Source: Thecamonas trahens ATCC 50062
Lineage: Eukaryota; Protista; Apusomonadida
DNA: 64,000 bases
NCBI RefSeq assembly: GCF_000142905.1
Contig: NW_013657647.1
Location: 165,142 to 229,141 of the forward strand
Reading direction: 5' to 3'
Under the pieces are notes generated by a model. The model was given only the letters and a program-made list of their open reading frames with translations. It did not search any database and was not told where the DNA came from. A program made the translations under genes and the position numbers. Positions 12,991-37,172 of this stretch are shown one piece after another (the first letter of the stretch is position 1; the number at the start of each line of letters is the position of its first letter).

Positions 12991-13496
12991 TGTTGTGTGA
13001 GAGTGAGGTACGTGGGAGGGTTGGGCTTGGTGGTGGGTGGTGGTGGTTGACTCACAGGTCAATGGTGGGTGAGGGAGGGTGCGACCGAGTGTCTTGACAA
13101 TGGTCGTTCATTCGTTTTCGGATGGTCCTCAGGCCGAGGGGGGGGTANNNNNNNNNNNNNNNNNNNNNNNNNNNNNNNNNNNNNNNNNNNNNNNNNNNNN
13201 NNNNNNNNNNNNNNNNNNNNNNNNNNNNNNNNNNNNNNNNNNNNNNNTAGGCAAAGAATGACCCATCTTTCCCGGACGGGGGGTAATAGTGTGGGTCCCC
13301 GGAGGGGGGTAAAGGGGAGGGAGGTTTCCCGCCATTCCGGCCGCCTTTCCTGCCTGCCCCCCTGCCTCCCCGTTAACCTTCCCGCCACGCTCCGCCCCCC
13401 GCCCCCCCCCCCCCCCCCCACCACCCCGCCAACCACAGGCAGACAGGCAGACAGTCAGACGATCAACGTCACACTTGACTCCGACAACGACAACAC

Positions 13497-15893
13497 ATGG
13501 GAGTTCTTCAAACGGTTGTCATTCTCGTCGGAGTAGCTGCTGCTGCTGGGTACTTTGTCTTTGTCTCGGACTTGGTGGTGACAACTTGGTCGCCTGTAGT
13601 GGCTGGCTGTGAGCTGTCGCTGGAGCGGACAGCCCGTGGCAACTCAGTCATGTCTATCCATGCTGACTCGGATCGATGTGCTGCTGTGGGGCAGGGATGG
13701 GCTCATGCTATGGATCGATTGGTTCAGATGTGCTTTGTTCGTATCCTCACCACCTCTCGCTTTGGGGAGGTCTTTATGGGTGATGAGCCCAAGGTGATGG
13801 CCATCGATGCAGCCATCGCCGCTATGCGTCTGCCCGAGGTGGCCGAGGAGGCCTACACCGTGCTAGACGAGCATTCCAAGGAAATGCTCGAGGCTTATGC
13901 TCATGGCGTCAACGCGTACATTGCCGATCATTGGCGACCTTTTGAGTTGGCTCTCGTCGGCTACGATCCCGAGCCGTGGACTCCGCAAGACACGCTCATG
14001 ACCCTTAACCTCATGTCGGTGGTCGATCTCGCAGACGCCCAGTTGATGATGGAGAAGTTTGTTGTTCAGGCAGTGGCGGGCGGCGCTCCTCTGGCGCCGC
14101 TGCACGCGCTTCTTGGTCCGGCCGTCGCAGGTCTCGACGACGAGCTTGCTGCCGAGATCAAGGAGCTCATTCTGTACGACCTCCCTGTCCCTGACATCCT
14201 GTCCATGGTCGCCGGCGCGCCGGTCAAGGGGCTCGGCTCCAACAACTGGGTTGTTGACGGCTCGGTGACCGCGTCGGGCAAACCGATTATGAGCTCGGAC
14301 CCGCACCTGCAGACTTCGCGCCTGCCGGCAGTGTGGTACGAGGTTGTCGTCTCGGTCCGCGGCGGCACGACCTGGGCCGGCATCGGCATGCCGGGCCTGC
14401 CGGGCCTAATTATGGGCCGTACTGACGCACTTGCCTTCTCATTCACCTATGGCTTTGCCGACCAGTTTGAGCTCGTCATCGAAGAGATTGTGGATGGCAA
14501 GTACCGTGCCGGCGCCGACAAGTGGCTTCCGCTCGCGGTGCGGACGGCGACACTGAAGCAGAAAGGTGGCAGCCCGGTGACGGCAACCTACTACTCGACG
14601 CGCAACGGCCTCCTCGAGTACGATCCGCTGGCGGCCCAGCCGCCAGCGGACGGCAAGTACCTCGCGCGAGTTTGCTCAATCTCCGGAGCCGGCATTGCGC
14701 AGACCATTGCGGCAGCGCTCCGGGCCTCCGAGGCCCAGACAGTGGCCGAGGCTCAGGCGCTGCAGGCGCAGTTTGCGCCGTCGTTCAACTTTCTCACCGC
14801 CGACACTGCAGGCAACATCGGGTACCAGCAGTCTGGCGAGGCGTTTGCCGGTGGCCCGTCGTTTGTCCCGCGCAACGGCTGGAAGCTCGCGTCGCCGCTG
14901 GCGACTGCGGAACGGATGCCTGCGTCCGAGCTAGTGCGCGTCACCAACCCACCGAGTGGAATGATGGCAACGGCTAACAACGACGTGTGCGCCGACATGC
15001 CGGGCGGCGCCGGGCGGGAGCAGTGCATTGTCAACCTTCACATGGGCCCTGACCGCGCGTCGCGGATCATGGCCAAGCTCGCGCATGAGGCTGCCAAACA
15101 CCCGCTCACCGCTGCGGACATGAAGGCTCTGCAGCAGGACATGTACTCGCCGTTCATGGCGGCGCTGCTTGATGGCTGGCTCGGCACTGAACTCGGCAAG
15201 CTCGCTGCCGCCGGCAACGTCGGCGCCCAGGCTCTTCTTGCCTGGGACCGCCGCTACACGCCCGATTCGGCTGCAGCCTCGCTCTCTCACGACATCCTCC
15301 ACGCTCTTCTCGACGCTACGTACTCTCTTGTGTTTGGCCACGAGGCGTGGCATCGTGTGGTCACCGAGACGCCGCTCTACGCCGACTTTGCACACCTGTT
15401 TAACGCTGCGCTACTCGATGTCTCGACCGACAAGCTTGGCGTCTTCTCGTCGCCTGACGCCAAGGCATCGGCGCTGGCTGCAGCCGCGGCTACCGTGCTT
15501 GCGCCTGTGGCCGAGCAGGATGCTTTGGCAACAGTCGAGGCGTGGGGCGACCGGATGGCGTTTACCCAGCTCAATATCTTCTTTGACGGCCACATGGCGT
15601 TCCTTGGCCTTAACAACGGGCCGATCCAGATGCGCGGCTCGCACGGTGTTGTAGTCCAGGGCGCGCTCACCACCATCAAGGGCCGCGCTTCCAACTGGTC
15701 GCAGTCCTGGCTCATGGTCACCGATCTGGCGTCGTCTTTCATGGAGACGCTCCTTCCAGGCGGTCCGTCTGGCCGTCGCTTTTCATGGCTCTACCTCACC
15801 GGCATCGACGACTGGATCAGTTACAACCACAAGACCATCGACGTCTTTTCAGCCTCATCCACCGCCGATGCCGCCGCCAAGACCGATCTGTAA
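13497..15893 (+). CDS. Penicillin acylase / Ntn-hydrolase (peptidase S45)
   Basis: GQGWAHAMDRLVQM, LEAYAHGVNAY, nucleophile GSNNWVVDG..TASGKPIMSSDPHL, ADTAGNIGYQ, GGPSG; N-terminal signal or anchor; C-terminus KTDL. Confidence 0.93.
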   Translation: MGVLQTVVILVGVAAAAGYFVFVSDLVVTTWSPVVAGCELSLERTARGNSVMSIHADSDRCAAVGQGWAHAMDRLVQMCFVRILTTSRFGEVFMGDEPKVMAIDAAIAAMRLPEVAEEAYTVLDEHSKEMLEAYAHGVNAYIADHWRPFELALVGYDPEPWTPQDTLMTLNLMSVVDLADAQLMMEKFVVQAVAGGAPLAPLHALLGPAVAGLDDELAAEIKELILYDLPVPDILSMVAGAPVKGLGSNNWVVDGSVTASGKPIMSSDPHLQTSRLPAVWYEVVVSVRGGTTWAGIGMPGLPGLIMGRTDALAFSFTYGFADQFELVIEEIVDGKYRAGADKWLPLAVRTATLKQKGGSPVTATYYSTRNGLLEYDPLAAQPPADGKYLARVCSISGAGIAQTIAAALRASEAQTVAEAQALQAQFAPSFNFLTADTAGNIGYQQSGEAFAGGPSFVPRNGWKLASPLATAERMPASELVRVTNPPSGMMATANNDVCADMPGGAGREQCIVNLHMGPDRASRIMAKLAHEAAKHPLTAADMKALQQDMYSPFMAALLDGWLGTELGKLAAAGNVGAQALLAWDRRYTPDSAAASLSHDILHALLDATYSLVFGHEAWHRVVTETPLYADFAHLFNAALLDVSTDKLGVFSSPDAKASALAAAAATVLAPVAEQDALATVEAWGDRMAFTQLNIFFDGHMAFLGLNNGPIQMRGSHGVVVQGALTTIKGRASNWSQSWLMVTDLASSFMETLLPGGPSGRRFSWLYLTGIDDWISYNHKTIDVFSASSTADAAAKTDL

Positions 15894-15954: not shown

Positions 15955-18381
15955 ATGTCAAACGCCTTGAGGGCGTAACCATCCACGCGATCACATCCAA
16001 CAACAGTCGCCTTCCGCGAAGCACGCTCTTCGGGGACAACGAACGATCCCCCCCCCCCCCCCCCCCGCGGGCCCGCCCTCCCCGCCCCCCCACTCCGAGC
16101 ACCTCCTTGGCCACACTCCACGCCCCAGCCATAGCGGACGAGGCCATGCTGTCGTCCCCCCGAAGCGAGTGTTCCAAGCGCAACGCGGAAGGCCTCTTCT
16201 CAACAAGCGGAATGTAGTCCTGGGCATGGTCGCCCTCCTCGGCCTCTACCTGGTGAGCAACCTGTACAGCTCGGGCGGTCTCGCTGGCACGGGTCGTGGG
16301 CAGAGCGGAAGCCACCTGGACAAGGATGCCCGCATTGTCATTCTCGGTGCTGGTGTGACTGGTCTCGGTGCTGCCTACCGTCTCAATGAGCTCGGTCACC
16401 GTGACTGGGCCGTCTATGAGATGGCCGACAAGCCCGTTGGCCTCGCTCAGTCGGTTGTCGATGACCAGGGCTTCACCTGGGACATCGGTGTCCATGTCCT
16501 CTTCTCGCACTTTGGCTACTTTGACACGCTCCTCGGTAGGTGCCCTTCTCCCCCTCCCCTGGCGTCGCCATCTCCCCTCTGATTCCTCACTCACACCGAT
16601 CCACAGACGCCCATCTGCCGGTCGACGAGTGGCAATACCACACTCGGTCGTCGCCGATCTACATGCGCGATCGGTTTGTGGGCTACCCACTGCAGAACAA
16701 CGTGTGGCGGCTGCCGCCGGCCGATGCGGAAAAGTGCCTCGTCGGCTTGCTCGAGGTCCACGACGATGCCGTGGGTGGCGTGACCAAGCCCAAGCCGCAC
16801 ACCTTTGCCGAGTGGGTCGATCAGTCGTTTGGCTCGGGCATCGCCGAGGTCTTTATGACTCCGTACAACTTCAAGGTATGGGCCCATCCCACCACCGAGC
16901 TCAACCCGACGTGGGTGGGCGAGCGGGTGGCAACCATCGACTTTAAGCGCATTCTCTCCAACATGGTCAACGAGTTTGAGGACGTCCACTGGGGGCCCAA
17001 CGCCCGGTTCCGCTACCCATCGCGTGGAGCAGGCAAGATCTGGGAGAATGTCTACCGCGGCCTCCCGCGATCGCGGTTTAACTTTGAGATGGAGGCTCTC
17101 GAGATCAACGTCGACGACCCGAACAACAAGTACGTGGCCTTTGCCGATGGGACCCGCGTCCCGTTCGACGCACTCATCTCGACCATTCCCATGGACAAGC
17201 TGCTCACTCGCATTGCCAACCGGCCGGACCTCGCCGCGTGGGGCTCAGAGAAAGGCGCGTTCAAGCGGCAGACCGTCAACCTGGTTGGGGTCGGGGTCGA
17301 AGGCATCACGCCCGCAGCGTGGAACTCCTCGCACTGGATCTACTTTCCCGAGGAGATCTACCCGTTCTACCGCATCACGCTCCTCACCAACTTTTCGCCG
17401 TACATGGTGCCCAAGCCTGGCGAGCAGTACTCGGTCCTGGTCGAGGTCTCCGAGTCCAAGTACCGCAAGGTCGATCAGGCGACGCTCGTCGACGACGTCA
17501 TCGCCGGCCTCAAGCACGCCGGCGTCATTCCGGACGGCGCGCCGATTGTCTCGCGCTGGCAGGAGCGGTTTGACTATGGCTACCCGGTGCCGTACGTCGA
17601 GCTCACCGAGCACGTTCTCCGTGCCAACGACGAGCTGCTCCAGCTCGGCATCTGGTCGCGCGGTCGCTTCGGCAACTGGCGATATGTGACGGGCAACCAG
17701 GACCACGTGTGCATGCAGGGCGTGCAGGCCGTGGACAACATCCTGTTTGGCGACTACGAGGAGATTGTGTACGAGCCCAACGTGGTCAACGGCAAGAAAG
17801 GCCAGCGCAAGATTCTTCCGCCCAAGATCAAGGACCATTGGGATGTGGTCATCCCAGGCTGTGCCTCCCATCTCGCCACCTGGCTCACACCGCTCCTCGA
17901 CGACCTCGCCGCCGCTGACATCGTCCCGCGGGTCTTTGTCTACTCGTCGTGTGAGTCTGACGACAGCCTGCCGGACACGGTCACTTCCAACTACGATATT
18001 CGGATGATGTCTGCCCCCGAGGCGTCATCCCGCACCGCCAACCTCGTCACCTACGCCTCGCACGTCCTCGCTAACTACGATGACCTCAACCCGATCACCT
18101 TCTTCCTGCCCGGCGCTGCAACTATGGGCGCCTCGCTCACCCACCCCTCGCCGCACGACTTTGACATCACCTCGTCGTACGAGAACCGCGGCCACTTTAT
18201 GTATCAGAAGGCCGATGGCGTCACCGACCCGCACTTCTGCACCTTCTTCGAGGCCCTCTACGCTTTTGATGGCCTTGACTGCCCGACGGTCTTTGACTCG
18301 GCAGCCGCCTTCCACATCTCGCGCGGCACCCTCCTCCACCTCTTGCCGCAGGACTATCAGGACCTACTCAAGCACGCCTAA
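15955..18381 (+). CDS. glf: Eukaryotic-type UDP-galactopyranose mutase with N-terminal TM anchor and C-terminal DUF3431-like domain; exons ~15955-15974 (tentative), 16129-16535, 16607-18381
   Basis: GAGVTGLGAA (FAD), DIGVHVLFSH, YPLQNN, WVGERVA, WGPNARFRYP, FYRITLLTNFSP, GRFGNWRY..GNQDH. The intron at 16536-16606 restores FDTLLDAHLP. The first exon uses a weak GTAACC donor. Confidence 0.88.
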
Positions 18382-18398: not shown

Positions 18399-21300
18399 TT
18401 ACTGCTTGCCTAGGCCAAGCCGGAACTTGTGCTTCTGCTTGACCTTCCCGTGTCCGCCGTCACCACCAGGAGCCGGTGCCGCCGGAAGAGCAGATCGCTC
18501 CTCTGCGCCAGGTGAAGGAAAGAAGCCCTCAGCAACCCAGGCCGCCACGTACGCATCGACCAGCTGCTTCGATACCGGCGGACATCTTGCTGAAATCAAC
18601 TCCTTCGAGTTCGGCACCTCAAACTTGGGATACAGCTCAGGCGGTGGCAGCTCACCGGCCAAGCCCGAGATGTCGCCCGACTCTTCAAAGAAGAGCAAGA
18701 CAGGGAGAAGAACGCCATCGTCGCTCCGCCGCGCATGCTCCAGCAGCGTCCGGAACCATCCGTCGTACGATGACGGGTACAACTTGTACTTGGCCCGCCG
18801 CAGCAGCTTCCACAGCCGCGTCAGCGGCATCGGACTTGGATTGAGAATGTGGAAGTCGCGCCCGAGCCCACGCCCAGAGAGCGCCAACTCGACCACGGCC
18901 TTGGACGCGTAATCCACGGGCGTAAAGTCGACGAGTGTCTCCAGCTCGGACGGCACAAACTTGGTCTCTACACAGCCCTTGAGGACCCTCGTCAGCAGGT
19001 CATCATGCGAGCCAGCGCCTGTCTGCGAGTGGGGCGCAATACGTCCGAGCCGGTAGATCGAGGCCGGCACGCCGCGCTCGCAGCGCGCCAGTGCCACAAT
19101 CTGCTCGCCAACCCACTTGGACTGCGAGTAGCCCGAGACCAACCGCTCCCACCGTGGGAACACATCAGTTTCAGAAATAACCCGCGCATCAGTGTCCAGC
19201 GTCGAGAGCGTCGAGATAAAGTGGACCGGGGTGGCGGCATCGCCGCCGATCGCCCCAAAGCACGCCAGCCGCAGCACCTCCTGCGTCCCAATCACGTTTG
19301 GGCCCTTGAGAGCAGAGTACGGGTACACAAAGTTGACTCCCGCGCCGTTGTGAATGATGACGTCAACAGACCGCGCGAGAACCGAGAACGCGTCCGATGT
19401 CAGCCCAAACATGTGCGGCCCGAGCTCGCCGACCACGACGCGCACCCGCTCGCCGTAGGTCGCCGCTGGAGGAGGCAGCCCAAACTTGGACGCGCCCACG
19501 TCAAGTCGCGCTCGCCCGCTTGCTTCATCACTTGCTCGGACCAGGCACTTGACCTCGGCCCGCGTGTTTGCCAACAGCTCGGCAAGAAGAAACGAGCCCA
19601 CGAACCCGGTGGCGCCTGTAAGAAAGACCACCGGTGGCGCAAGGAACGATCCAGCGCCGCTTGCCCGCGGCACCTCGCCGGACGCCGGCGCGCAGATCTC
19701 CGACGGCAGCACAACCTCGCCCGCGAGGTCAATCTTGACCACGCTCTCGTCCGCTTCGGCCACGCCTGTGGCCCGCGCCACCACGTTGGCTAGCGCGCTC
19801 ACCGTTGGCGCTTCAAACACCTCACGCATCCCGATCCGCACCCCCAGCCGCGCCTCGATAATACCTACGAGCTGTGCTGCGAGCAGCGAGTACCCACCGA
19901 GCTCGAAAAAGTTGGCGTGGATGCCCACAGACGCCAGCCCGAGCACCTGAGCCCATGCCGCAGCCAGCTCAGCCTCAACTTCGGTCCGCGGTGGCGTGTG
20001 GTCCACCCCACTAGCGCCGACTCCCGCAGCATCCTCCGCTGTTGGTGCAGGCAGCGCTCGCACATCAACCTTGCCGTTGGCCGTCAGTGGAAGCGGCCCG
20101 CTCAGCACCACAATTGCCCGCGGCACCATGTACTCGGCGAGCTTAGCTGCTGCGTGAGTGTACAGTTCCTGACGCAGCAATTGCGTCGCCCGCTGCGGTG
20201 CCACATACGCCACAAGCATCTTCTCCGCTGCGCTTCCTGCCCCGCACGCCATCGCCACCACAGCCGCGTCCGCAACTCCTGGTGCTTCCCGCAGCACCAC
20301 CTCGATCTCGGCGAGCTCGATGCGGAAGCCGCGGATCTTGACCTGGGCGTCAATCCGGCCCAAGCACGCTAGCGACCCGTCGCCACGCCAACGCACCACA
20401 TCACCTGTCGCATACATCCGTCCGTCACCATACAATCCGCTTGCAACCTTCAGCCCGAGGCTCTCGGCCACGCTGCGCCACCAACGATCGTCTTCAAACA
20501 CCGACGCCGTCTTCTCTGGCAGGCCAAGGTAGCCGCGAGTCACACCGGCGCCTCCGACTAGAAGCTGTCCACGCATGCCGCGCCGCACCAGCGTTCCGCG
20601 CTCGTCAGTCACATACGCAAAAGTGTTCGCAATCGGCTTCCCGATCGGTGGCGGCCGCACGTCACCGTGTACCCGCCCAACTGTGCACCCAACCGTGGTC
20701 TCGGTTGGGCCGTACATGTTGTACAAGGCCAGTTGGTCGCCGTACATCGCCTGCCATGCCTCTGGTAGCACCATCTTGAGCTTGTCACCGCCAGTGTTGA
20801 TGACACGGAGCGCAAGTCCGGCTGGAGGTGGCTCTCGGAGCACAGCCTCGGTCATAGGCGTCGCCATTGCCTGCACCGTCACCTGCGCATCTACCCACCA
20901 CTGCAGCAGCGCGCGCGGCTCGAGCCTAGAGCTCTCCGGTACGATGGCCACCTCCGCCCCACAGCAGAGTGCGGGCCAGATCTCACAAAAAACAGGATCA
21001 AACGACACGCCAAGCATATGGCCCGACACATCGCCGGGACCCATCTCGTAAGCCCGCAGCCACCACCCAATCATGTTGAGCAAGCACCCGTGTGGCACGC
21101 AAATACCCTTGGGCGTGCCAGACGTGCCCGAGGTGTAGATAACGTTGGCAACTGCAGAGGGGCCAGCTGGTGCCCGCACCAGCCGCGCGCTCGACACACC
21201 CAGCGACTCGCCGCCCCGCCCCAGTCGCGCGTCGTCGTCAAAGCTCAGCACATGCCGCTTGGTCCCCGGAGCCGGCGGACTCAGCTCGGGAAGCTCGCCA

Positions 21301-24300
21301 CGGTACAGCACGCACACAGGCGCCGAGTTCTCCAGCATGAACGCGATGCGTCCATCCGGAAACGTTGGATCAACTGGCACATACGCACCGCCGGCCTTCC
21401 ACACTGCGAGCATGCCGACAACAAGCTCCAGCGACCGCGGCAAGACCAGGCCGACGACCGAGCCCACAAACACGCCGCTTGCGCGTAGGATCCTCGCGAT
21501 GCGATTGGCCCATGCGTTGAGCTCAGCGTACGTCATACTTGTGCCGCTGCCGTCGACCACTGCCACCGCGTCAGGTGTCTCCGCCGCACGCGCCTCGACC
21601 AGCTCATGGACGCCGACTGCCGCACGCCTTTCGCCGCTGCCGTCACCATCGGCGTCGTCGCTCTCGTCATCCCCTGCGGCGACAAGGACGCAGGTCGGCG
21701 GAGATTCGTCAAACATGACGTCCTGGTGGGTTTCCGTCAGCAGCTGTGCCTCTTCATCAGCCGTGAGAACCGGCATGGCCGCCGCTTCGGCCGACGGCTC
21801 AGCCAGCGCAGCCTGAACAAGAGCAGCAAACCCGCCAGCGAGCGAGGAGATGGTCGCCTCGGCAAAGATCTCGGTGTTGTACTGGAAGAACGCGCGAATG
21901 CCGTCGTCAGCCTCGGAAACCACCAGCTGGATCTCATACGGCGCCGTGCGCTCCGCAAGCGGCACCGACTCCAGAGTCAGCGACGAGCCGAGACTCAGCG
22001 AGTGGCCGCCAACGCCCATGACAAACGCGTCCAGCTCCTTGGCAAGCTTGCCATGCGGCCGTTCAAAGACAAACAGTGCCTGGAAGACTGGCGATCGCGA
22101 GGTCTCGCGTTCCGGTGCCACCGACTCGAGCACAAGCGTGAACGGGTAGTCGGCGTGCGCAAGCGCACCGAGCGTTGCCACCCGCACTCGCCGCAGTACG
22201 TCTTCAAAGCTCTCGCCCCGCCGACACGTCGACCGCAATGCAACGGGATTGGCCAAGAAACCAACTAGCCGCTCGAGCTCGATCCGCGACCGACACGCCA
22301 TAAGTGTACCTACAACCACCTCGTCCTGCCCGGCCGCGCGATGCAGTAGCAGCGTGTACAAGGCAAGGAGCGTCATGAACATCGTCGTGCCTTCGGCAGC
22401 ATTCAGCTCCCGCAGCGCAGCCGTCGTCGCCCCGTCGAGCTCAAAGGCATAAGTTGCACCGGCCGATGACAGCTTGGCAGGCCGTGGATGATCCTCAGGC
22501 AGCGTCAGCGCCGGAAGCCGGCCGGCCAGTTGCTGAGTCCAATAGGCCTCGAGCTGGTGGCCCTCAGCTGTGCTCAGCCGGGCAGCTTGCCATCGGTTGT
22601 AGGTGTGCAGCTGCAGCGCCTCGGCACGCTCCGCTGCAAGCCCGAGCGCCACAAATCCCGAGTCGGGACCGCTGTTCTCGGCCAAGTCGTACATGCGGCC
22701 GAGATCCTCCAGCAGTACCACCATCGACCACAGATCACAGCAGATGTGATGGGTAACAAAGGCTAGCCAGAAGTCCGCGCCGTCGTTGACCACCGTCATC
22801 GACGTCAGCGGCCCAGTTTCAAGCGCAATGCAGGCTTCAACGGCGTCGCGGAGAAGCTTTTCGGCGCTAGGCGAGTCGCTTGCAGCCAGGACCTCAAAGC
22901 CAAAGCCAAAATCAGGGTCGTAGTACATGAGCGGAACCTGGCCACCGGCCGCAGTCTGGTACCGGGTGGCCAGACCCGGATGTAGTTGGACCAAGAGCGC
23001 CATCGCCCGCTGCAGCCGCGCTACGTCAAGCCTGTTTCCAGCCTTGGCCACAAACGACACGTTGTACGTGGTGTCACTCGGATTCAGTAGGTAAGCGTAC
23101 CACAGCGAAGCCTGGTTAAGCGAGACCGGGTGCGGCTCGTGGAGCCAGTCATCGGCACCGAGCGCCGACTCACCGACAGGCGCCAGTGGAACATGATCGC
23201 GGTCGCAGACCTCGCCGCCGACACCGGCCTTGGCACGCGCCTCTAGGTACGACGCAAAGCCGGCGATGGTCGGGTTCTCAAACACCGCCGAGACCGAGAT
23301 CTCGACGCCAAAGGCAACCCGAGCGCGTGACGCGACCTGCGCGGCCGCCAGTGAGTGGCCACCAAACTCGAAAAAGTCGCAGGAGATGCCGACCTTGGTA
23401 ACGCCCAGCACCTCCTTCCAGATGTCGGCCACAATGTCCTGTGTCTCGGTCACCGGAGCATCGTCGAGAACTGTGCCGGTGCCGTCTTCGGGCTCATCAA
23501 CGAGGCTCACCCGCTCTTCGCCGCCCGCCTCATCGAGCCACTGAACAAGCCGCCGCCGATCAGTCTTGCCGTTGGCAGTTGTGGGCAGTGATGCCAAGCC
23601 CCACACCACAAACCGCTTCGGCACCATGTACTCGGGCAGCGATGCTCCAAGGGCGACCCGCAGAGATCGCGCCGAGACGTGAACATCGGTGCCGCCGGCC
23701 GCAACCACAAACGCCACAAGGTGCTTGCCCAATGCCGAGTTGTCGGAGACCACAACTGCAGCCTCAGACACGGCCTCGACGCTCGCCAACACCGTTTCGA
23801 TCTCGCCAAGCTCGATGCGGAAGCCGCGGATCTTGACCTGGTGGTCCTTCCGCGCCGCGTACCACAGCTCACCGTGCTCGTCAAATCGCACCACGTCGCC
23901 AGTCTTGTACAGACGTGGCGCCCAGGTGGCCGATGAGAACGGGTTGGCCACAAACGACGCTGCAGTTTTCTCCGGCAAGTTGAGGTAGCCACGTGCTACG
24001 CCGAGGCCACCAACGTACAGCTCACCCCACACCCCGAGCGGGACGGGTGCCATGAGCTCGTCGAGAACGTACACAACCTGATTGGTGACTGGGAAGCCGA
24101 TCGGCGGCGGAAGAAGCGTGCGCGGCGGGAGCGGGCCGGCAGCACAGCTCCACTCGAGCGCGACCGGATCCTCGGGCGTGATGTGTGCAACGGCAGAAAT
24201 GACTGTGTTCTCGGTCGGACCGTACAAGTTAATGACCTTGAAGGCCGCGGCTGGGTCTGGCCGGGTGTGCACCACGTCACCACCGGTGAAAATGTACCGC

Positions 24301-27300
24301 AGCGGCAGCGCACAGCATGCGTCGCGCTCACGAAACATGGCCTCCATCAGCGGCGTCGGCGCGAGGCAGCAGGTTAAACTATGGGTGGAGATGAACGTCA
24401 TCAGCTCTAGAACGTCGAGCCGCTTGCTGTCATCAACTGGCCAGAGCGAGCCTCCAGCGTAGAGAATAGGCCACATCTCGATGACGCAGGCATCAAAGCC
24501 AACGCCGCACGACATTGTCGCCCGGTCGGCAGCAGACAGAGCGTACGTCTCGAGCATGTGAACAACGAGGTTGTTGAGCGAACTGACCTCAATGCACACA
24601 CCTTTGGGATTGCCGGTTGTACCCGAAGTGTAGATGACGTACGCAAGCGAGGCAGACGAGAAGCCACTGCTAGCAGGCGCAAGAACGCCTGGCCGCGCCG
24701 GATCGTAATCCTCTGCACCAACGCAGCCGTCGATCTCGAGCCAGTGGCTGCAGTGCGGCATGACTGCTCGGTCGAGGCTTGCCACCAGCTCGGACGTCTC
24801 GGCGTGAAAGAGGCAGATCGGCGCGCGAGAGTCAGCCAGCATGTACTCCAGGCGGTGGACCGGGTAGTGGTAGTCCATCGGCATGTAGGCAAGGCCGGCG
24901 CGCATGATGCCCACCATGGCAACCAGCGAGTCGATGGACCGGTGCATGCAGACACCGACAACAGTGTCGTGGTCCACACCCGGCACGTCTAGGAGCATAG
25001 ACGCAACTCTGGCCGATGCCCCCTCGAGACCGGCAAAGGTCAGGCGCCGCGGCGGCGAAGACCCCACCTGAGTCCGTCCAGCCTCGTCCACAGCCACAGT
25101 CTCGGGCGGAAGCTCAGCGGCGTGTCTAACTAGGACGTCAAGGAGCGAGTGTCGGTCATCGAGATCGAGCCGCTCCGGCTGAAAGGCGTGCATGACAGTC
25201 TCAATCTCGACAGGGGGAGCGACTTGAGCCGATGCAAGAACAGTGCCTGGCTCGGCAATCCAGGACGAGGCCAAATGGACAAACCAGTCTAGCATCCGTT
25301 CCATCCGCGCCGGTGCAAAGACATCGGCGTTGTACTCGAGTGAGAGCGCGGTGCGACCGTCAGCCAGGCGGGCGGCGACAAGAGTGAGGTCAAACATGGC
25401 GGCATGCCTAGGCATCTCGCAGCCAGTTGCGGCAAAGGGACCAAAGTCGACCCGAGTCCCGGGTCCACCCTCGCCGAGCAGCAGCGCACCAAGTGCATTG
25501 TGCTCGATTTGGGTCTTCTGCAGGACAAAGGCGGCCTGGAAAATCGGCGAGCGAGACGAGTCGCGCGCTGACGAGTCCATGCACTTGGCCACCATTTCCG
25601 AGAACGGAAAGTCTTGATGGTCGAGGGCTTCCAAGACCGAGATCTTGACCTGGTCAACGAGCCGGTACAAGCTTGTGGACTTGGGCTGCACCACGTCGCG
25701 GATGGGAACCATGTTGATAAAGTAGCCGACGGTGTCCTCAAAGCCCGGTTCGGAGCGGCCAGCCATAGGCGAGCCGACAGTGACGTCGGTCTGGTGGGTG
25801 ACTCTCACCAGAAGCGCCTTGAACAGCGCGAGCAGGACGACATACTCGGTGGCGGAGCAGTCGCTTGCCAGCGATGCTAGCGCTGCGGTTACATCGGCGC
25901 TGAGATGCGTTCGGACAAGTCCACCAGCGTGCGAGGCACTGGCCGGACGGACATAGTCGGTCGGGAGATCCAGGGCCTCGACGCCGTCGAGCTTGCGCTT
26001 CCAGAAGCCCTCGAGACGCGAGCCCTCTACGCCGGCGAGGATGGCGGCCTGGTGGGTAGCAAAGGCATGGTACGGCTTGCCGGGCTGGGCGAGGCCAACA
26101 CCAATGAGCTGCGGCGCGACTGGTGCAGGCTTCGACTTGTGAGTCCCGTACCGCGCCGCGAGCTGGCTGACTATGAGAACGAGTGACCACAGATCAACGG
26201 CAATGTGGTGAACAGCAAATCCGAGCCAGAGTCGGGGCCCAGGGCACGACACGGCGCGACAAGCTAGGAGCCGGCCACTGCCAAGATCAAACGGCAGGAA
26301 TGCGAGAGAGTCGAGCGCGGCGCGAGCAGCGGATGCACTGCTGGCCTGCACGCGGGAAAAGAGTGGGATGCCAGCGTCATGTGCAGCCTTGCGCAGCTCG
26401 TTCACATTTCGAGACCGCGGTGCATTTCCAGCGTAGGCCGTGCGCAGCTGTGGATGCGCGTCGAGCACATCGTAGAGCGCGAGTTCAAAGGCATCAAGTT
26501 CAAACACACCTGGTGCCTCAATCTCCATGGCAAATGTGATCGAGTATGCGGCAGTAAGGAGCTTGCCCGGAGTAGAGTCTGCACCAGCGCCACTGGCAAT
26601 CTGGTCAAGGAACCAGAGCGCGTTCTGGTTGTACGACAGCAGCATCAGCTGCGTCGACGGGCTTGATGCGGGAAGTATCGGCGACGGGGGATCGATGGAG
26701 TGGCCGACGCACACGCCAACAGTGCTGCAGCGACACCGGCAATCGTCGGTGCGTTGTAAAAGGCTGATAGCGGGTAGTGAACTAGACCAAACTCGCGACG
26801 GAGCCGGGAGACCAGGCGCGTGGCGGTCAGCGAGTGGCCGCCAAGATCAAAGAACGAGGTTGTGGCCGAGAGAGAGGTCATGGGCAGCGCGAGCATGTCA
26901 GCAAAGATGGCTGCGACGAGGGACTCAGAGTCGGATGCAAACGATCCTGGCGCCCGTGGTGAGAGGCGTGCGAGAGCGCCAGTCGAATCGGCTCGTGGGC
27001 CTTGGCCAGCGTTCCCGCCATGGCTCGCATGCTCGATGAGTGCATCGTGCGTTGGCGGCGGCAGCGCCTTGCGGGCAACCTTGCCTGACGGAGTGAGCGG
27101 AAAGTGGTCCATAAAGACGAACGCCGACGGGACCATGTACGACGGCAGCGAGGCAGCCACGTGGTCGACCAGATCCGCTGGCGTGACCGCCGGATCGCCG
27201 CCAGAGCCAGACAAAGCGGCAGCGACAAGGTAGGCAACCAGAATACGTGACGCTGGTGAGCTAGATGTCGAGCCCGGTGCGTCTTGAGCGACAACGACGG

Positions 27301-30300
27301 CTGATTGAATCGCTGGGTGGGTGCCGAGAACAACCTCGACCTCCCCAACCTCGACTCGATGACCACGAATCTTGACCATGGCCGACTTGCGGGCGAGGTA
27401 CTCGAGCTCTCCAGACGCCAGCTGGCGGACCATGTCGCCAGTGTGATAGAGACGGGCGCCAAGCGGAGCGGCGGGCGTCAGGGTGTCGGGCACAAAGGCT
27501 GCCGCGGTGAGGTCAGGTGCGTGGAGATAGCCGCGGGCGAGAACGTCGCCGCCGATGAGCAGCTCGCCCGGAACACCGGGCGGAACAACAGCTCCGCTGG
27601 CATCAACTATGTAGCAACGGGCCTTGGCGATGGGAAACCCAATCGACGGAAGTGCGGGCCAAGCCGCTGGATCGCCGTCAAGAACCGCAGCGGTGACCAC
27701 GTGGGTCTCGGACGGCCCGTAGTGGTTGTGCAGCGAGGACTTGGGCCCGAGACCAGCAAAAAGCGCGCGGACGGCGCGGGTGCAGAGGAGCTGCTCGCCG
27801 GCGGTGATGACCTGGCTGAGCGCGCGCGGAAGGAGCCGAGTCTCGAGCGCCATCTCGGCAAGCGCCTGCAATGCGACGTAGGGAGAAAGACTCGCTCAAC
27901 GCGCGCAGTCTCCATGACTGCCAGCAGCATTTCAAAGTCTTTGCGGACCATTTCGGGGACGAGAACTAGCGAACCGCCTGTAGAGAGCGCGGAGAAGAGT
28001 TCCTGAAAGTGGACATCAAACGAGAGCGAAGCAAACTGAAGAGTAACTGCCGGGTGCGCGCCGAGCGTGATGTGCTGCCAGGCGATGAGGTTAGAGAGTA
28101 CACCCGAGACCATGGCGACGCCCTTCGGCAAGCCAGTTGAGCCCGACGTGAAGATGACGTAGGCCAACGAGTCTGGCGAGCGCGGCGTCAGCTCGAGGTT
28201 GGCGGCACAGGTCGAATCCGAGGTCTCAGGCTCAGGCTCGAGCGGAAGCTGGATGATACCAGCCATGCTGGCTGCGGCGTCGGCCATATCAGGCTCAAGA
28301 AAGCGGGAAGCTGTGGCGTCCGAGACCAGGGCGACTGGTGCACACGAGGTCTTGAGCATGTATGCCAGGCGCGAGGCTGGATATTGCGGGTCGAGCGGGA
28401 CGTACGCGCCGCGAGCCTTGAGAACGGCGAGCACAGCTACAACCATGTCAATGGAGCGCGGAATCATGACGGCCACACAAACGTCAGGGCCAACACCAAG
28501 GTCAACAAGCTTACGGGCAAGGATGTTGGCAGCAGCGTTGAGCTGAGCGTAGGTACAGGAGGCCGACGGCGTGTTGGAGACGTCGGTTTCAGCATAAAAC
28601 GCGAGCGCGAGCGCGTCCGGAACGCGGGCGACAGCAGCCTCGAACATGGCCTCGACCGACGAGGCGGCGAGACTGGCGTACTCGCCAAGCTCGGTCGGCT
28701 GCAACAGCGCTGCCTGGTGATGCGGCGGAGCGACGGCGAGCTTGCCCACAATGTGGTTGACTTCTGCGTCAGTAAGAAGGGAGATCGAGGTCAGATCAAG
28801 AGTCCCGGGCTGAGCAGCGGTGGCGAGGCTCTCCAGCACGCGAACAAAGTGGGTCGCGAGGCGGGCGACGGTGTCTGATGCAAGCGAGGCCTCCGCGCAG
28901 TGTACAGCGCCACCAAGGCTGCCGTCGGGTGCCTCGGCAAGGACGAGTCCGACGAGCGCAGCATGAAGCGAGAGCGGAAACGGCGCGGCGAGGTCGGAGC
29001 CGGTGACGGTCACGCCCGGGCCGGGCTCCCACTCGGACTCGGGCCCGCAGACACCGGTGAGGACCAGCGGTGGCGCAGTGGCGCGACCATGAGCGCGAAC
29101 AAAGGCAAACGCCGCGTTGGTCTCGGTCTCGCCGCGCTGAACAATGCCAAGGGCGGCGAGCTTGTCGCGCAGCAAATCGGCCGGATACTCTTGGTGCTCC
29201 GAAGCAAAGACAAGCGCGTCGCGGACGGCTGCGACAAAGGTGGTCAAGGTAGCGTCGCCATCCGGGACGGTGAGCAAAACAGGGACCGAGTTGGCAAAGG
29301 CACCGACAGTGAACGCGGCGCGCGAGCGCCGAGCGCGCCCGGAAAAGACAGTGGAGACCACCAGCTCTTCCTGGCCGCCAGCGTAGCGTGAGAGGACCAG
29401 CGCGTAGGCCGCAAGGGCTAGAGCCTTCAGATCGACGCCGAGTGAGCGGGAAGCACGGTCAAGGGCTCGGACGGTGGCGCGTGGGATAAGGAAAGTGGCC
29501 GGTGGCGGCAAGGGCTGAGCATTGTGTGTCTGCTCGCGGGTGAGCTCCAGCGGCGGCAAAAGGTGTGCGCCCGCACCGAGAGCTTCGTACCAGTTGGAAA
29601 ACAGGGCCTTTCCACGGTCTGAGTCGAGGTAGCCGGCCAGGTGTGTGGCGTAGCGCGGGTACTCGAGATCGACATCACGAGAAGAGGCATGAACCCGGGC
29701 AATGAGCCGGGCATGCTGAATCTCGGTCAGCATGTAGCCTTCCAGTAGATGGCGGAGAAGGATGAGGCCCGAGAGCTCGTCGGCAACCAGCCGAGAAGCG
29801 ACAATGGCAACAGTCCACGCAGCGTCATCACGTGTATCGCGGCAGTAGACAACCCGGAAGAGCGGCGCGGCTGACGGCGGGTGGAGGTCTCCTCGGAAAG
29901 CGAGACGAGCAAGCTCGTCGCGGCGATCGCACTCCTCGACCAGACACGAGTGCGCAGCGGCGACCCACTCTGAGTGCGGTGGATGGACAAAGTAGGTGGC
30001 GGCATCAAGGGCATCGGAAGCGAGGTCAAAGGCGGCGCGAAGCATGGGATGGCGCGCAAGCAGCAGGCTGGCGGAGGCCTGAAGGCGCGAGAGCTCAAAG
30101 AAAGCGCCGTCGTGAAGCCTGATGGAGGCGGCGACAACCAGATGCGGAAGTCTGCGACCGGCGCGAACGACGGCGGCTTGCTGGAAGCTCAGCGGCGCCG
30201 GCTCATCGCCAACAATAGCTGCGACTGGGAGCGCAACAAGCGGCGGCGAAGACGATGAGAGTGACGGCGAGTAGGCCGAGGTCAGCGGTGACGATGAGGC

Positions 30301-30714
30301 CGACGACGGAAAGGCGGGAATGCCCTGGGCCCGCACAAGCGGCGAAGGCATGGCGTCAAAGTAAGAGGTGAACGATCCGACAAACGAGCCGGCTGCAAAC
30401 GAGGGCGTGGCGATGGCCGTCGGTGACTCGGCGGTCAACGGAGCGTACGACGACCTGACGGCCGGCGAGTACAGCAACGGTGACGGAAGAGGAGCGCCGG
30501 GCGAAGCCACGGTAGCCATGAGCACAGCAGGTGGTGGCTGGACAACAGCTCCATCTCCAGCTCCAGGAGCAGTCGACGAGACAGGCGGTGATGCGGCCGA
30601 AGCGAAGCGGAGCGACGATGCGGCCGAGGCAGCGAGGACATGGGCGTGGAGCGAGGAGCGGACCGACGAGGCGCGGAACGACGATCCGGTAGAGAGTGAG
30701 CCAGGTATGGTCAC
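18399..30714 (-). CDS. Three-module NRPS C*-A-T-C-A-T-C-A-T-R (~4100 aa), broken by two -1 frameshifts (~27882, ~26688)
   Basis: Three A domains (Y/FTSG...PKG, YGPxE, TGD), three T domains (GGHSL, GGHSL, GGYSL), C motifs HHIAVD and HHICCD plus a degenerate first C, terminal SDR (TGATGFVG, YSQSK). Joins track ORFs 27607-30714, 26645-27871 and 18399-26714. Confidence 0.92.
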
Positions 30715-31459: not shown

Positions 31460-33188
31460 ATGGGACGCGGGGGGATGGCGCAGGAGAAAGGATCAGTCAA
31501 TGCATCTGGAGTGATGAGCGAGTCGTCTGCACTGCTTGGCCATGTCGAAGTGGTTGAGGGAGGCACGGCCAATTCTGACCACGACGGCCACGGCCACGGC
31601 CATGGCGGTCATGCCCAGGCCTCAGTCCCTGCTTCTATCTTCAACCTCATGAACACTATGATTGGAGGTGGCACTGTTGCCATGGGTACGGGGGTCGGGG
31701 GGGGGGGGGGGGGGCGGGAGGGGGCGGGGAAGGGGGCGGGGGAGGGGACGGGGAGGGGACGTGGGGGGGGAAGGCGGGGGCGGAGGCATCCACAGTCACC
31801 GCAGTCACATGAGAGGGGATAGGGCCCGGGTGGGAAGAGGGAGGAGGGAAGAGGGGGAAGGGGGAAGGGAACTTATAGTGTGGAGGTGTTGGTGTTATCG
31901 ATGTGGAATCCGGGTTCGACTGGCTTTGTGGTGGCCGACCCTGCATGGTCGTTGGTGCCTTGCTGTGGCTGGCTGGCTGGTGACTGGTGGTGGCTGGTGA
32001 TGGCTGTTGGTCGTCATCATGGGGGGATGATGGAGAGTACAGCCGTTTGCTTTCAAGAGCGCCGGCATCGGGTTGACGCTCATCTTTATGCTTATTATTC
32101 TTGTGTTCTGCGACTACACGCAAAAGCTGCTCTTCCGCTCCTCGCGGATTGCGGGCAAGGCCGGACGGACGTACGAGGACCTGGGGCGTGTGGCGTTTGG
32201 TGAGCGTGGGGTCAAGGTGACCCAGATTGTGGAGGTGCTCAACACGTTTGGCGTGCTCATTGCATACCAGGTCATCATTGCAGACCAGTCTGACATTCTC
32301 AAGCGGTGGCTCTCGGACGACTTTATCCTGCTCCGGTGGCACTCGAAGCTCTTCCTCCTGGTGGCTGTGGTGGCTGTCATCATGCCGGTTTCGATGGCGC
32401 GGACGATGAAGTTCCTAGCCATTCCGTCAATGCTCTCCCTGCTGGCGATTGGGATCACGGGCGTGGCCATCATTGTGCGTGGCATCGAGCATGCCGGCTC
32501 GGCGACCAAGAGCTCGCAGATCCCGTCGTGCAGCGTCGAGTTTTTCAAGTTTGAGACTAATCTGCTCCTCGCACTGCCGATCGTGACCCTTGCCTTTACC
32601 TCGCATATTAACTACCTGCATACGACGGATGCGCTTAAGCGCCCGACGCCTGGTCGCGTTGCGCTCGTCTCGCACACCTCGATGATCCTCTCGGCCGTCT
32701 TCTACATTGCGGTCGGTATTCTTGGCTACTCGACGTTCTGCGACTCGACGCCCTCGGACATTCTTGTCGGCTACTCGCCGAGCGACGACCTCATCCAGGT
32801 CTCGCGGGTCCTCATGATCATCTCGTTTATGTTCTCGTACCCGCTCCTCTGCTTCCCGTGCCGCAACGCGGTGACCCAGATCTTGTTCAAGGGCAAGCCG
32901 TTCTCGTGGCCCCGCCACATCAGCATCACCCTCATCATTGTTGTCCTCACTTACCTGGTCGCCATCTCGGTCCCAAACCTCGGCGTTGTTGTCGGCTTTA
33001 TCGGCTCCATCACTGCCACCGCCCTCTCGCTCACGCTTCCGACCGCGTACTACCTTAAGATCGCCGACGGCCCGATTACGTCGGCCGACAAACTTCCGGC
33101 GCTGGCAGTCCTCATTCTCGGCACCTCGTTTGGCATCGCTGCAACGGCAGCATCGATCTACAACATTACCCAGGGCAATACCGAGTAG
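31460..33188 (+). CDS. AAAP/SLC38-family amino acid transporter; intron ~31685-32042
   Basis: SIFNLMNTMIGGGTVAM|PFAFKSAG, YEDLGRVAFG, AFTSH, YPLLCFPCR; about 11 TM segments; N-terminal ExxxLL (ESSALL). The donor region has one G too many for an in-frame splice. Confidence 0.9.
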
Positions 33189-36849: not shown

Positions 36850-37172
36850 TGAATGAACATACTTCCCATCCCCTCCTTCCTCGCCTCTGTTGCCGCCAAT
36901 TTCCCCATTTCGCTCGAAACCAAAAAATTCGTCCTTCGTCCAAGAACCCCTTTCCTCCAAAAAAAAGGCCTTCGGTCAGCTCCCCTTCCCCTCCCCCCCC
37001 CTCCCCCAAACCACGCGCACACCGCCATTCACTTCTCTCGACCACACATACATGTACGCCCCTCCCCCCTCCCCCCCCCCCCCCTCCCCCCTCCATTCCT
37101 TCCCCTTCTCTCCATTCCCACTCCCTTCCCCTTCCCCACCTCACTACATCCTTCCATGTGTCAGTTGCCAGG

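What the first reader, a model, noticed from the sequence alone, without database searches (positions are those of the whole stretch)
18399..30714. Intronless three-module NRPS with terminal reductase in a protist-like genome; predicted Pro-hydrophobic-X peptide aldehyde or alcohol
Seen: architecture C*-A-T-C-A-T-C-A-T-R. Hand alignment to the GrsA positions gives the codes A1 DVQFIAHVVK, A2 ~DAILFGLVIK and A3 ~DPCANGMVGK. The first C has SRLVADE in place of HHxxxDG and follows ~170 aa of Ser/Pro-rich sequence. Known: DVQxIAHVVK is the proline signature; R domains release aldehydes, alcohols or cyclic imines, and peptide aldehydes are often protease inhibitors; multimodular NRPS are sparse outside bacteria and fungi. 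Inference: an uncharacterised tripeptide product, an unusual A3 pocket, and a bacterial-type origin.
Basis: partly seen in the sequence, partly recalled or inferred. Interest (0 to 1): 0.82.

Follow-up and report, generated by a model that had tools for sequence, protein, structure and literature searches.

The report
Bacterial-type three-module peptide synthetase in Thecamonas
The free-living flagellate Thecamonas trahens carries a real, bacterial-type, three-module peptide-making enzyme gene that probably builds a proline-first tripeptide released as an aldehyde or alcohol. Its two apparent breaks look like sequencing errors, not decay.

Summary
On the minus strand at 18399-30714 lies a C*-A-T-C-A-T-C-A-T-R non-ribosomal peptide synthetase. 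It is read as three open frames separated by two frame breaks.

The genome is Thecamonas trahens ATCC 50062, an apusomonad. GenBank already holds a 4002-aa model of this gene, which bridges the breaks with implausible introns of 26 and 86 nt.

- **Breaks:** both are "one base missing" at short homopolymers. The essential Prp8 gene of the same assembly has the same defect, so the gene is most likely intact, at about 4040 aa.
- **Catalytic motifs:** all are present except in the first C domain, which reads SRLVADE in place of HHxxxDG.
- **Substrate codes:** A1 carries the proline code DVQFIAHVVK. A2 (DAI[C/L]FGLVIK) and A3 (DPC[M/A]NGMVGK) match no assigned code.
- **Eukaryotic context:** the gene is contiguous with an intron-bearing eukaryotic UDP-galactopyranose mutase gene, so it is not contamination. 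An Sfp-type PPTase gene exists elsewhere in the genome.
- **Relatives:** all named relatives are bacterial, at about 34% identity. One collinear orthologue at 43-70% identity lies on a Tara Oceans protist-fraction contig. It has the same dead first C domain and nearly the same codes.

No paper in the searched library links Thecamonas to NRPS. Verdict: a new member of a known kind, of moderate interest. The scan's index showed no earlier NRPS note on other DNA.

The parts
18399..30519 (-). Whole NRPS gene. The ATG is at 30519 and the stop codon at 18399-18401. That is 12121 nt in the assembly, or about 4040 codons if one base is missing at each of the two breaks.
   Evidence: The GenBank model P0001 (4002 aa) maps to 30519-27892, 27865-26735 and 26648-18402.
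30208..30519 (-). N-terminal low-complexity leader of about 105 aa. Ser, Ala and Pro make up 55% of it.
   Evidence: A Pro/Ser/Thr-rich leader also precedes the same domain on the Tara contig.
29155..30099 (-). C*, a condensation-domain homologue (Pfam core). The whole domain spans about 28795-30207, starting at PLSFQQ (30195).
   Evidence: PF00668 E 2.4e-21, profile positions 39-339. Alignment with C2 and C3.
29776..29796 (-). SRLVADE, in the place of the catalytic HHxxxDG motif. Both histidines are absent.
   Evidence: Of 392 aligned C domains, 383 have HH at this position.
27080..28644 (-). A1 adenylation domain, split by break 1. Its code is DVQFIAHVVK (proline).
   Evidence: AMP-binding profile positions 1-293 fall in frame 1 and 281-384 in frame 2. 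TIGR01733 positions 1-230 and 228-409 split the same way. Code. Published Pro codes are in PMC2866473, Table 2.
27880..27883 (-). Break 1. One base is missing at a C-run/T (GGG on the + strand), inside the conserved VFLPYVALQ segment.
   Evidence: The Tara orthologue reads IFLPYVALE through this point without a shift.
26720..26917 (-). T1 carrier domain (FFDLGGHSL).
   Evidence: PF00550 E 4e-14.
26686..26690 (-). Most likely site of break 2, a run of five C (GGGGG on the + strand) in the Pro/Ser-rich T1-C2 linker. The shift must lie between 26648 and 26846.
   Evidence: The shift is again of the 'one base missing' kind.
25206..26549 (-). C2 condensation domain (HHIAVDLWS).
   Evidence: PF00668 E 6e-60. 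Motif.
23565..25124 (-). A2 adenylation domain. Its code is DAI[C/L]FGLVIK, which is unassigned. The pocket is hydrophobic.
   Evidence: The code is identical on the Tara orthologue.
23244..23435 (-). T2 carrier domain (FFEFGGHSL).
21738..23129 (-). C3 condensation domain (HHICCDLWS).
   Evidence: PF00668 E 5e-76. Motif.
20070..21596 (-). A3 adenylation domain. Its code is DPC[M/A]NGMVGK, which is unassigned and unusual.
   Evidence: The Tara orthologue reads DPA[M/A]NGMVG-.
19782..19970 (-). T3 carrier domain (FFELGGYSL).
18522..19628 (-). Terminal thioester reductase (R) domain. TGATGFVG and YSQSK are both present.
   Evidence: TIGR01746 scores 275.5 bits against a cut-off of 213. PF07993 E 5e-57. 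MxaA (4u7w) E 7.8e-68.
16226..18381 (+). Convergent neighbour: a eukaryote-type UDP-galactopyranose mutase gene with a 71-nt GT-AG intron at 16536-16606. Its stop codon lies 17 bp from the NRPS stop. It is listed as evidence of eukaryotic context, not as part of the pathway.
   Evidence: 4dsg E 5.8e-91.

Best explanation
This is a genuine nuclear gene of the apusomonad Thecamonas trahens. It encodes a bacterial-type modular NRPS of about 4040 aa with the order C*-A1-T1-C2-A2-T2-C3-A3-T3-R.

The two frame breaks are most likely homopolymer under-calls in the assembly, so the gene is one uninterrupted, intron-free ORF in the organism.

Inferred mechanism:
1. An Sfp-type PPTase, encoded elsewhere in the genome, primes the three carrier domains.
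2. A1 loads L-proline.
3. C2 joins it to the residue loaded by A2. The A2 pocket is lined with hydrophobic residues.
4. C3 adds the A3 residue, whose pocket is unusual and unassigned.
5. The MxaA-like NAD(P)H-dependent R domain releases the tripeptide from T3 reductively, as an aldehyde or, after a second reduction, an alcohol.

The N-terminal C* domain lacks both catalytic histidines, so it probably does not acylate the proline. It has been kept in this dead state in the marine orthologue as well, which points to a structural or partner-docking role.

Shown here: gene, domains, motifs, context, relatives. Inferred: intactness, substrates, product.
For: **Identity and domains**
-.

**Breaks look like assembly errors**
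- Both shifts are -1 and sit at C-runs. Break 1 falls inside a motif conserved residue for residue with the orthologue.
- The annotated introns of 26 and 86 nt delete conserved residues.
- In the same assembly, the PROCN domain of the essential Prp8 gene is split by a -1 shift in an A-run.

**The enzyme looks functional**
- There is no in-frame stop in 12.1 kb other than at the two shifts.
- All A, T, C2, C3 and R motifs are intact.

**Substrates**
- The A1 code equals published proline codes.
- The codes are conserved in a 43-70% identical collinear orthologue.

**Release and priming**
- The R domain's best solved match is MxaA.
- An Sfp-type PPTase gene is present.

**Eukaryotic context**
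- There is no N between 13248 and 34807.
- The neighbouring UDP-galactopyranose mutase gene has a GT-AG intron.
- An Aa_trans gene lies upstream.
- GC3 is like that of the host genes.
Against: - The assembly as it stands does carry two frameshifts. I found no independent read or transcript contig that spans them.
- Homopolymers are also hotspots for real mutations.
- There is no expression or chemical evidence.
- The A2 and A3 substrates cannot be named.
- Position 4 of each code depends on the alignment.
- Whether the R domain stops at the aldehyde cannot be read from the sequence.
- A C domain without the HH motif could still have a non-canonical activity.
Confidence: 0.62

Rival explanations
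1. Recently inactivated pseudogene. The two frameshifts are real, and the bacterial-derived NRPS is decaying in T. trahens.
For: There are two frame breaks in the only available assembly. No fragment from other sequencing runs bridges them.
Against: - Both breaks are the same -1 homopolymer type that also splits the essential Prp8 gene in this assembly.
- There are no other stops in 12 kb, and every catalytic motif is intact.
- The residues on both sides of break 1 match the orthologue exactly.
Confidence: 0.15
2. Bacterial contamination or a mis-scaffolded bacterial contig.
For: All named relatives are bacterial. 100-N gaps lie at 13148-13247 and 34808-34907.
Against: - Within the same gap-free 21.5-kb stretch, the gene ends 17 bp from a eukaryote-type UGM gene with a 71-nt GT-AG intron. 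It also lies next to an Aa_trans transporter gene.
- GC3 of 0.70-0.72 is in the host range.
- It has a Ser/Ala/Pro-rich leader and linkers.
- No bacterial genome or metagenome contig found is close to it.
Confidence: 0.02
3. The gene is intact but the chemistry differs from a simple free-amine tripeptide. C* may still accept an acyl or peptidyl donor in trans, which would give an N-capped product. Or modules may be skipped or used iteratively, so the product is not Pro-X-Y.
For: - C* is a full-length C-domain homologue kept in at least two lineages.
- It groups weakly with N-terminal C domains of bacterial synthetases (support 0.53-0.63).
- Known peptide aldehydes are usually N-acylated (my own knowledge).
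Against: - Both catalytic histidines are missing in T. trahens and in the orthologue.
- No acyl-ligase or extra carrier protein gene lies upstream.
Confidence: 0.15

Closest known systems
Bacterial multimodular NRPSs with a terminal thioester reductase, for example the unnamed cyanobacterial protein P0006 (Hapalosiphonaceae MAG) and AusA or MxcG as NCBIfam models
   Same: Same domain kinds and order logic: N-terminal C, C-A-T modules, terminal R. Identity is 30-35% over 83-98% of the 2771-aa piece. There are partial matches to the AusA and MxcG models.
   Different: - No NCBIfam equivalog cut-off is reached.
- This gene has three modules rather than two (AusA) or four (P0006).
- The first C domain is dead here but keeps HH in P0006.
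- The host is a eukaryote.
- No shared neighbour genes were found.
MxaA terminal reductase of the myxalamid synthase (PDB 4u7w)
   Same: Best solved match to the R domain, E 7.8e-68 over about 400 residues. The TGxxGxxG and YxxxK motifs are aligned.
   Different: MxaA ends a PKS/NRPS hybrid and makes an alcohol (my own knowledge). Whether this R domain performs one reduction or two is unknown.
Proline-activating A domains of bacterial lipopeptide synthetases (iturin and syringopeptin codes)
   Same: The A1 code DVQFIAHVVK matches DVQFIAHVxK (Pro), and the family shows F/Y variation at position 4.
   Different: Sequence-level match only, with no assay. Here proline is the first residue, behind a dead C domain.
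Tara Oceans protist-fraction contig (L005 / P0009, study PRJEB4352)
   Same: Collinear orthologue:
- C*-A1 at 40-43% identity, A1C-T1 at 56-57%, C2 to A3 at 51%, A3 core at 70%.
- The same dead first C domain.
- A2 code identical. A1 and A3 differ at one position each.
- Each C domain pairs with its counterpart at full support.
   Different: - The contig is cut at both ends, so its R domain and its organism are unknown.
- It has its own frame break in a G-rich stretch.
L-aminoadipate reductase (Lys2)-like A-T-R gene of the same genome (L088:5874-9947)
   Same: Same A, T and R domain families, and dependent on the same kind of PPTase.
   Different: It has a single module and no functional C domain. 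It is a primary-metabolism type and is not closely related.

Membership tests
Modular (type I) non-ribosomal peptide synthetase | Condensation domains with the catalytic HHxxxD motif | tested here: met
   C2 has HHIAVD and C3 has HHICCD, with PF00668 E 6e-60 and 5e-76. The first C domain does not meet this (see the starter C row).
Modular (type I) non-ribosomal peptide synthetase | Adenylation domains with core motifs (SGxTGxPKG, YGPTE, YxTGD, GK of A10) and Asp235 | tested here: met
   All three A domains meet this. TIGR01733 scores 722.7 bits for A2+A3. The A1 halves cover model positions 1-230 and 228-409.
Modular (type I) non-ribosomal peptide synthetase | Carrier domains with the GG(H/D/Y)S serine | tested here: met
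   GGHSL, GGHSL and GGYSL. PF00550 is found three times.
Modular (type I) non-ribosomal peptide synthetase | One continuous reading frame per synthetase | tested here: inconclusive
   There are two -1 breaks at homopolymers. The same error type occurs in the essential Prp8 gene. No independent reads were available.
Modular (type I) non-ribosomal peptide synthetase | An Sfp-type phosphopantetheinyl transferase in the genome | tested here: met
   L003:568-2016 has AASDHPPT_N (E 2.9e-21) plus ACPS (E 1.5e-10). Activity on this synthetase was not tested.
Terminal thioester reductase (R) domain | SDR fold with TGxxGxxG and a catalytic YxxxK, placed after the last carrier domain | tested here: met
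   TIGR01746 scores 275.5 bits, above the 213 cut-off. TGATGFVG and YSQSK align with MxaA.
Proline-activating A domain | Specificity code DVQ[L/F/Y]IAHVVK | tested here: met
   A1 reads DVQFIAHVVK. Published Pro codes are shown. Substrate activation itself cannot be tested with these tools.
Starter (lipo-initiation) C domain | An N-terminal C domain with an active HHxxxDG motif that acylates the first residue | tested here: not met
   It reads SRLVADE. The orthologue reads ILMDHDS. It groups only weakly with bacterial N-terminal C domains.
AusA-type aureusimine synthetase (NF047350) | Score above the equivalog cut-off, and A-T-C-A-T-R order | tested here: not met
   923.5 bits against a cut-off of 2500. 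The gene has three modules plus an N-terminal C domain.

The most novel reading that the evidence does not exclude
The Thecamonas gene may belong to an unrecognised lineage of protist C*-A-T-C-A-T-C-A-T-R synthetases that share a catalytically dead but conserved N-terminal C domain.

Evidence for such a lineage:
- The Tara protist-fraction orthologue has the same order and the same dead domain.
- P0051 has the same domain order and also lacks the HH motif. It lies on a eukaryotic contig, beside RNA polymerase I RPA2, a WW-domain protein and a GH38 mannosidase.
- P0049, from a JGI metagenome, has the same order and also lacks the HH motif.

If these share one origin, a bacterial NRPS was taken up early and kept in several heterotrophic protists. 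It would make small reduced peptides, perhaps protease-inhibiting aldehydes used against prey or competitors, with the dead C domain acting as a docking platform.

FastTree groups their C domains (support 0.96), but a fast IQ-TREE run does not. A common origin is therefore not excluded and not shown.
Probability: 0.25. Interest if true: 0.65.

Novelty: new member of a known kind. Interest (0 to 1): 0.45.

Why it matters
Multimodular NRPSs are rare in eukaryotes outside fungi. I found no paper in the searched library that links apusomonads, a close outgroup of animals and fungi, to NRPS.

- **A candidate new natural product.** The gene appears intact and long retained. It points to a small proline-first peptide aldehyde or alcohol from a culturable bacterivorous flagellate.
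- **Transfer and retention.** It is an example of a large bacterial gene being taken up and kept: codon usage is host-like, and an orthologue exists in a marine protist-fraction metagenome.
- **A practical correction.** The GenBank model removes conserved residues by inventing two introns. The assembly's homopolymer errors will mislead annotation of any long gene in this genome.

Tried and rejected
- **Introns at the breaks.** Rejected. The annotated introns are 26 and 86 nt and delete the conserved VFLPYVALQ and the end of T1. The only clear intron nearby is 71 nt with GT-AG ends.
- **Independent fragments spanning the breaks.** A word search with the 408-aa middle piece found no near-identical protein from Logan, EukProt or other sources.
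- **Full-library HMMER search with C*-A1.** The top 150 were dominated by giant synthetases. Only P0001 and P0009 stood out as specific, so it gave no further orthologues.
- **Pattern scans of metagenome and prokaryote genome collections.** Only generic NRPS hits, with 24-45% identity in the best segment.
- **Shared cluster partners.** The cyanobacterial homologue's neighbourhood shares nothing with this window. The penicillin-amidase gene nearby is separated from the NRPS by the UGM gene, and I found no link.
- **Naming the A2 and A3 substrates.** A literature search for code strings was unproductive. Nearest codes among 1139 bacterial A domains matched 6 of 9 and 5 of 9 positions.
- **R-domain tree.** Only 9 sequences, so uninformative.
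- **IQ-TREE.** The ultrafast-bootstrap run failed on thread limits and then timed out. The fast run did not reproduce the FastTree grouping with P0049 and P0051.
- **Second frameshift control inside the window.** Pfam continuity gave no clear case, so I used Prp8 instead.
- **Organism behind SRR23287145.** Its RPA2 has no close named relative.
Full report
**What is there.** Three long minus-strand open frames cover 18399-30714.
- Frame 30714-27607 (1035 aa) holds a Condensation homologue and the first three quarters of an AMP-binding domain.
- Frame 27871-26645 (408 aa) holds the rest of that AMP-binding domain, AMP-binding_C and a PP-binding domain.
- Frame 26714-18399 (2771 aa) holds C-A-T-C-A-T and a terminal NAD_binding_4 / thioester-reductase domain.

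The split A1 domain matches the Pfam profile at positions 1-293 and 281-384. It matches TIGR01733 at positions 1-230 and 228-409. It is therefore one domain cut by a frame change, not two genes.

**Whose genome.** A word search returned a 100% identical 4002-aa GenBank protein, 'amino acid adenylation domain-containing protein [Thecamonas trahens ATCC 50062]'. T. trahens is an apusomonad. The assembly is 28.7 Mb in 131 scaffolds, and the window is C33:165142-229141.

The window's other genes are typically eukaryotic:
- a RhoGEF-PH-SAM protein;
- an Avl9/DENN protein;
- an AAAP amino-acid transporter;
- a Ty3/gypsy element;
- a P-type Cu-ATPase.

**The two breaks.** The GenBank model maps to 30519-27892, 27865-26735 and 26648-18402. 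It bridges the breaks with 'introns' of 26 and 86 nt.
- The first 'intron' removes VFLPYVALQ, a conserved A-domain segment that contains specificity position 278.
- The second removes the end of T1 and part of the linker.

At break 1 the minus strand reads GTC TTT CTC CCT ACG TCG. The upstream frame gives VFLPT. The downstream frame gives SPYVALQ. The marine orthologue reads IFLPYVALE without a shift. One base is therefore missing at the C-run/T at 27880-27883.

Break 2 lies between 26648 and 26846 in a Pro/Ser-rich linker. It is again a -1 shift, and that region contains a run of five C at 26686-26690.

First-stage notes on other windows of this genome report many 'one base short in a homopolymer' shifts. 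I treated these as a lead and tested the idea on an essential gene. The PROCN domain of Prp8 (G000:C45) is split at about 289505. The profile is continuous across the split (positions 2-143 and 141-407). The shift is -1, and the split falls at an A-run: the assembly reads ...TTKERKS and then, in another frame...KSRFGNAFHLCRELL. Prp8 cannot be a pseudogene, so this assembly does contain such errors.

Apart from the two shifts, the NRPS has no stop in 12.1 kb. I conclude that it is most likely intact in the organism, at about 4040 aa. A real, very recent inactivation remains possible, at roughly 15%. A search for independent fragments that span the breaks found none.

**Not contamination.** No N lies between 13248 and 34807. 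In that gap-free stretch the NRPS stop codon (18399-18401) is 17 bp from the stop codon of a convergent gene (18381). That gene is a eukaryote-type UDP-galactopyranose mutase. Its best solved matches are 4dsg and 3ute, at E about 1e-90. Its FAD-binding first exon is joined to the rest by a 71-nt GT-AG intron at 16536-16606.

Upstream of the NRPS lies a divergent Aa_trans gene. The NRPS GC3 of 0.70-0.72 falls inside the range of the window's host genes, 0.66-0.84.

**Catalytic state.**
- **C2 and C3:** HHIAVDLWS and HHICCDLWS.
- **A domains:** all three keep the core motifs and the A10 lysine.
- **Carrier domains:** all three keep the serine, as GGHSL, GGHSL and GGYSL.
- **R domain:** it passes the TIGR01746 cut-off. 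Its best solved match is the myxalamid reductase MxaA, E 7.8e-68, with TGATGFVG and YSQSK aligned.
- **First C domain:** it is a full-length homologue that begins with PLSFQQ at 30195. It reads SRLVADE at 29776-29796, so both catalytic histidines are absent. Of 392 aligned C domains, 383 have HH there.
- **Leader:** a roughly 105-aa Ser/Ala/Pro-rich stretch precedes the first C domain.
- **Upstream region:** no further NRPS module or acyl ligase lies upstream.

**Substrate codes.** I read the codes from motif anchors.

| Domain | Code in T. trahens | Code on the Tara orthologue | Assignment |
|---|---|---|---|
| A1 | DVQFIAHVVK | DVQFVAHVVK | proline |
| A2 | DAI[C/L]FGLVIK | identical | none; hydrophobic pocket |
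| A3 | DPC[M/A]NGMVGK | DPA[M/A]NGMVG- | none; unusual pocket |

Forty bacterial A domains of the same DVQ..AH type in the hit set show RLFLPF, RLYLPF or RLFVPP at position 4. Counting F at that position reproduces published proline codes: DVQFIAHVxK for iturin and DVQYIAHVTK for syringopeptin (PMC2866473, Table 2).

In A2 and A3, position 4 depends on where a one-residue length difference is placed.

Among 1139 bacterial A domains from the hit proteins:
- Nothing but the marine orthologue matches A2 at more than 6 of 9 positions. The nearest are Gln-like DAW-FGLxx scaffolds.
- Nothing matches A3 at more than 5 of 9 positions.

The pocket is much better conserved between the two orthologues than the proteins overall. 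This argues for selection on substrate choice.

**Relatives and origin.** Apart from the protein itself, every named hit to the 2771-aa piece is bacterial, at 27-35% identity. The taxa include myxobacteria, cyanobacteria, Acidobacteriota, Gemmatimonadota, actinomycetes and Paenibacillus. The A1C-T1 piece is 48% identical to Longimicrobium fragments.

Solved bacterial structures match far better than the one fungal synthetase that appears. LgrA scores 4e-64 against 4e-18 for PsoA, and MxaA scores 8e-68 against 3e-11 for the PsoA R domain. 'Bacterial-type' is therefore supported. No donor group can be named.

The one close relative is P0009, on a 9.5-kb contig from the Tara Oceans study PRJEB4352. 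That study sampled the protist size fraction (PMC7488429). The contig is collinear from C* into A3. Identity is 40-43% for C*-A1, 56-57% for A1C-T1, 51% for C2 to A3, and 70% in the A3 core. It is unbroken at both Thecamonas break points. It has a Pro/Ser/Thr-rich leader and GC3 of 0.80, and it reads ILMDHDS at the first C motif.

In C-domain trees each Thecamonas C domain pairs with its counterpart on that contig (support 1.0). C2 and C3 are each other's closest relatives, with aLRT 100 for the four-member clade. The module duplication therefore predates the split of the two organisms.

**A lead that stays open.** Two further proteins have the same C*-A-T-C-A-T-C-A-T-R order and also lack the HH motif of the first C domain. 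P0049 reads ASGIACD and P0051 reads APRPLVD.

P0051 lies on a 50-kb contig from run SRR23287145. That contig also carries an RNA polymerase I RPA2 gene, a WW-domain protein gene and a GH38 mannosidase gene, so it is eukaryotic. Its RPA2 has no close named relative.

FastTree placed the C domains of these two proteins next to the Thecamonas/Tara clade (support 0.96). A fast IQ-TREE run did not. They are only 31-33% identical to the Thecamonas protein. A bacterial protein, P0050, also has a degenerate first C motif (RSLCAD). A common origin for a protist NRPS family is therefore possible but not shown.

**Supporting machinery.** The genome has an Sfp-type PPTase gene with AASDHPPT_N plus ACPS domains (L003:568-2016). 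It also has two AcpS-type genes. The only other Condensation hit in the genome is a Lys2-like A-T-R gene (L088:5874-9947).

**Literature.** No paper in the searched library holds both Thecamonas and NRPS, 'nonribosomal peptide' or 'peptide synthetase'.

**Verdict.** This is a real, probably intact, bacterial-derived trimodular NRPS with a terminal reductase in an apusomonad. It is already present in GenBank as a mis-modelled protein and has not been studied. The proline-first reduced tripeptide is a reasonable inference, not a result. I file it as a new member of a known kind, of moderate interest.

Noticed in passing
window 30519-18399 (GenBank model P0001): The public 4002-aa gene model invents introns of 26 nt (27866-27891) and 86 nt (26649-26734) to step over assembly frameshifts. 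In doing so it deletes conserved A1 and T1 residues.
   Followed up: yes
L089 (G000:C45:286001-295000), about 289505: The essential Prp8 gene is split in its PROCN domain by a -1 shift in an A-run. The open frames over the locus step f1, f0, f2, f1, each a -1 change. This suggests several such errors in one gene. Only the first was checked residue by residue.
   Followed up: partly
window 13497-15893 (+): An uninterrupted 798-aa penicillin-amidase (Ntn-hydrolase) family gene: PF01804 E 5e-115, with weak PDB matches to cephalosporin and penicillin acylases. This is an unusual family for a eukaryote. It lies 2.5 kb from the NRPS end, but the UGM gene separates them. Its origin and any link to the NRPS were not tested.
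   Followed up: partly
window 16226-18381 (+): UDP-galactopyranose mutase gene with a 71-nt intron. It also has an extra C-terminal extension of about 190 aa (query residues 398-590) with no match in the PDB search.
   Followed up: partly
window 32073-33188 (+): AAAP-type amino-acid transporter (PF01490) gene, transcribed divergently from the NRPS. Its first exon or exons must lie in the roughly 1.5-kb shared upstream region.
   Followed up: no
window 41802-45854 (+): Uninterrupted 1350-aa Ty3/gypsy-type polyprotein frame (zf-CCHC, RT, RNase H, integrase). It directly follows a 1787-aa FG-GAP/beta-helix protein frame (36423-41786).
   Followed up: no
window 51081-52589 (+) and 53268-55364 (-): Two ferric-reductase/NOX-type genes (Ferric_reduct, FAD_binding_8, NAD_binding_6) lie close together, next to a heavy-metal P-type ATPase gene (47921-51319).
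   Followed up: no
L088:5874-9947 (G000:C32): Lys2-like (C-remnant)-A-T-R gene of 1357 aa. It is the only other Condensation-family hit in the genome. It implies an aminoadipate-type lysine pathway and a need for the Sfp-type PPTase.
   Followed up: partly
L090:2093-15115 (Logan run SRR23287145): A 4340-aa intron-free NRPS with the same domain order and a dead first C domain. It lies on a GC-rich eukaryotic contig beside RNA polymerase I RPA2, a WW-domain protein and a GH38 mannosidase. The organism is unidentified.
   Followed up: partly
L005:8743-8908: The Tara orthologue contig has its own frame change, inside a G-rich repetitive stretch of A3. No intron signals were seen. It is probably an assembly error in that metagenome.
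   Followed up: partly
C-domain tree: C2 and C3 of this protein, with the motif HHxxxDLWS (Leu in place of Gly), fall in a C-domain group whose bacterial members sit mostly at the very N-terminus or right after a loading region of about 690 aa. The meaning for C-domain subtype is unclear.
   Followed up: no
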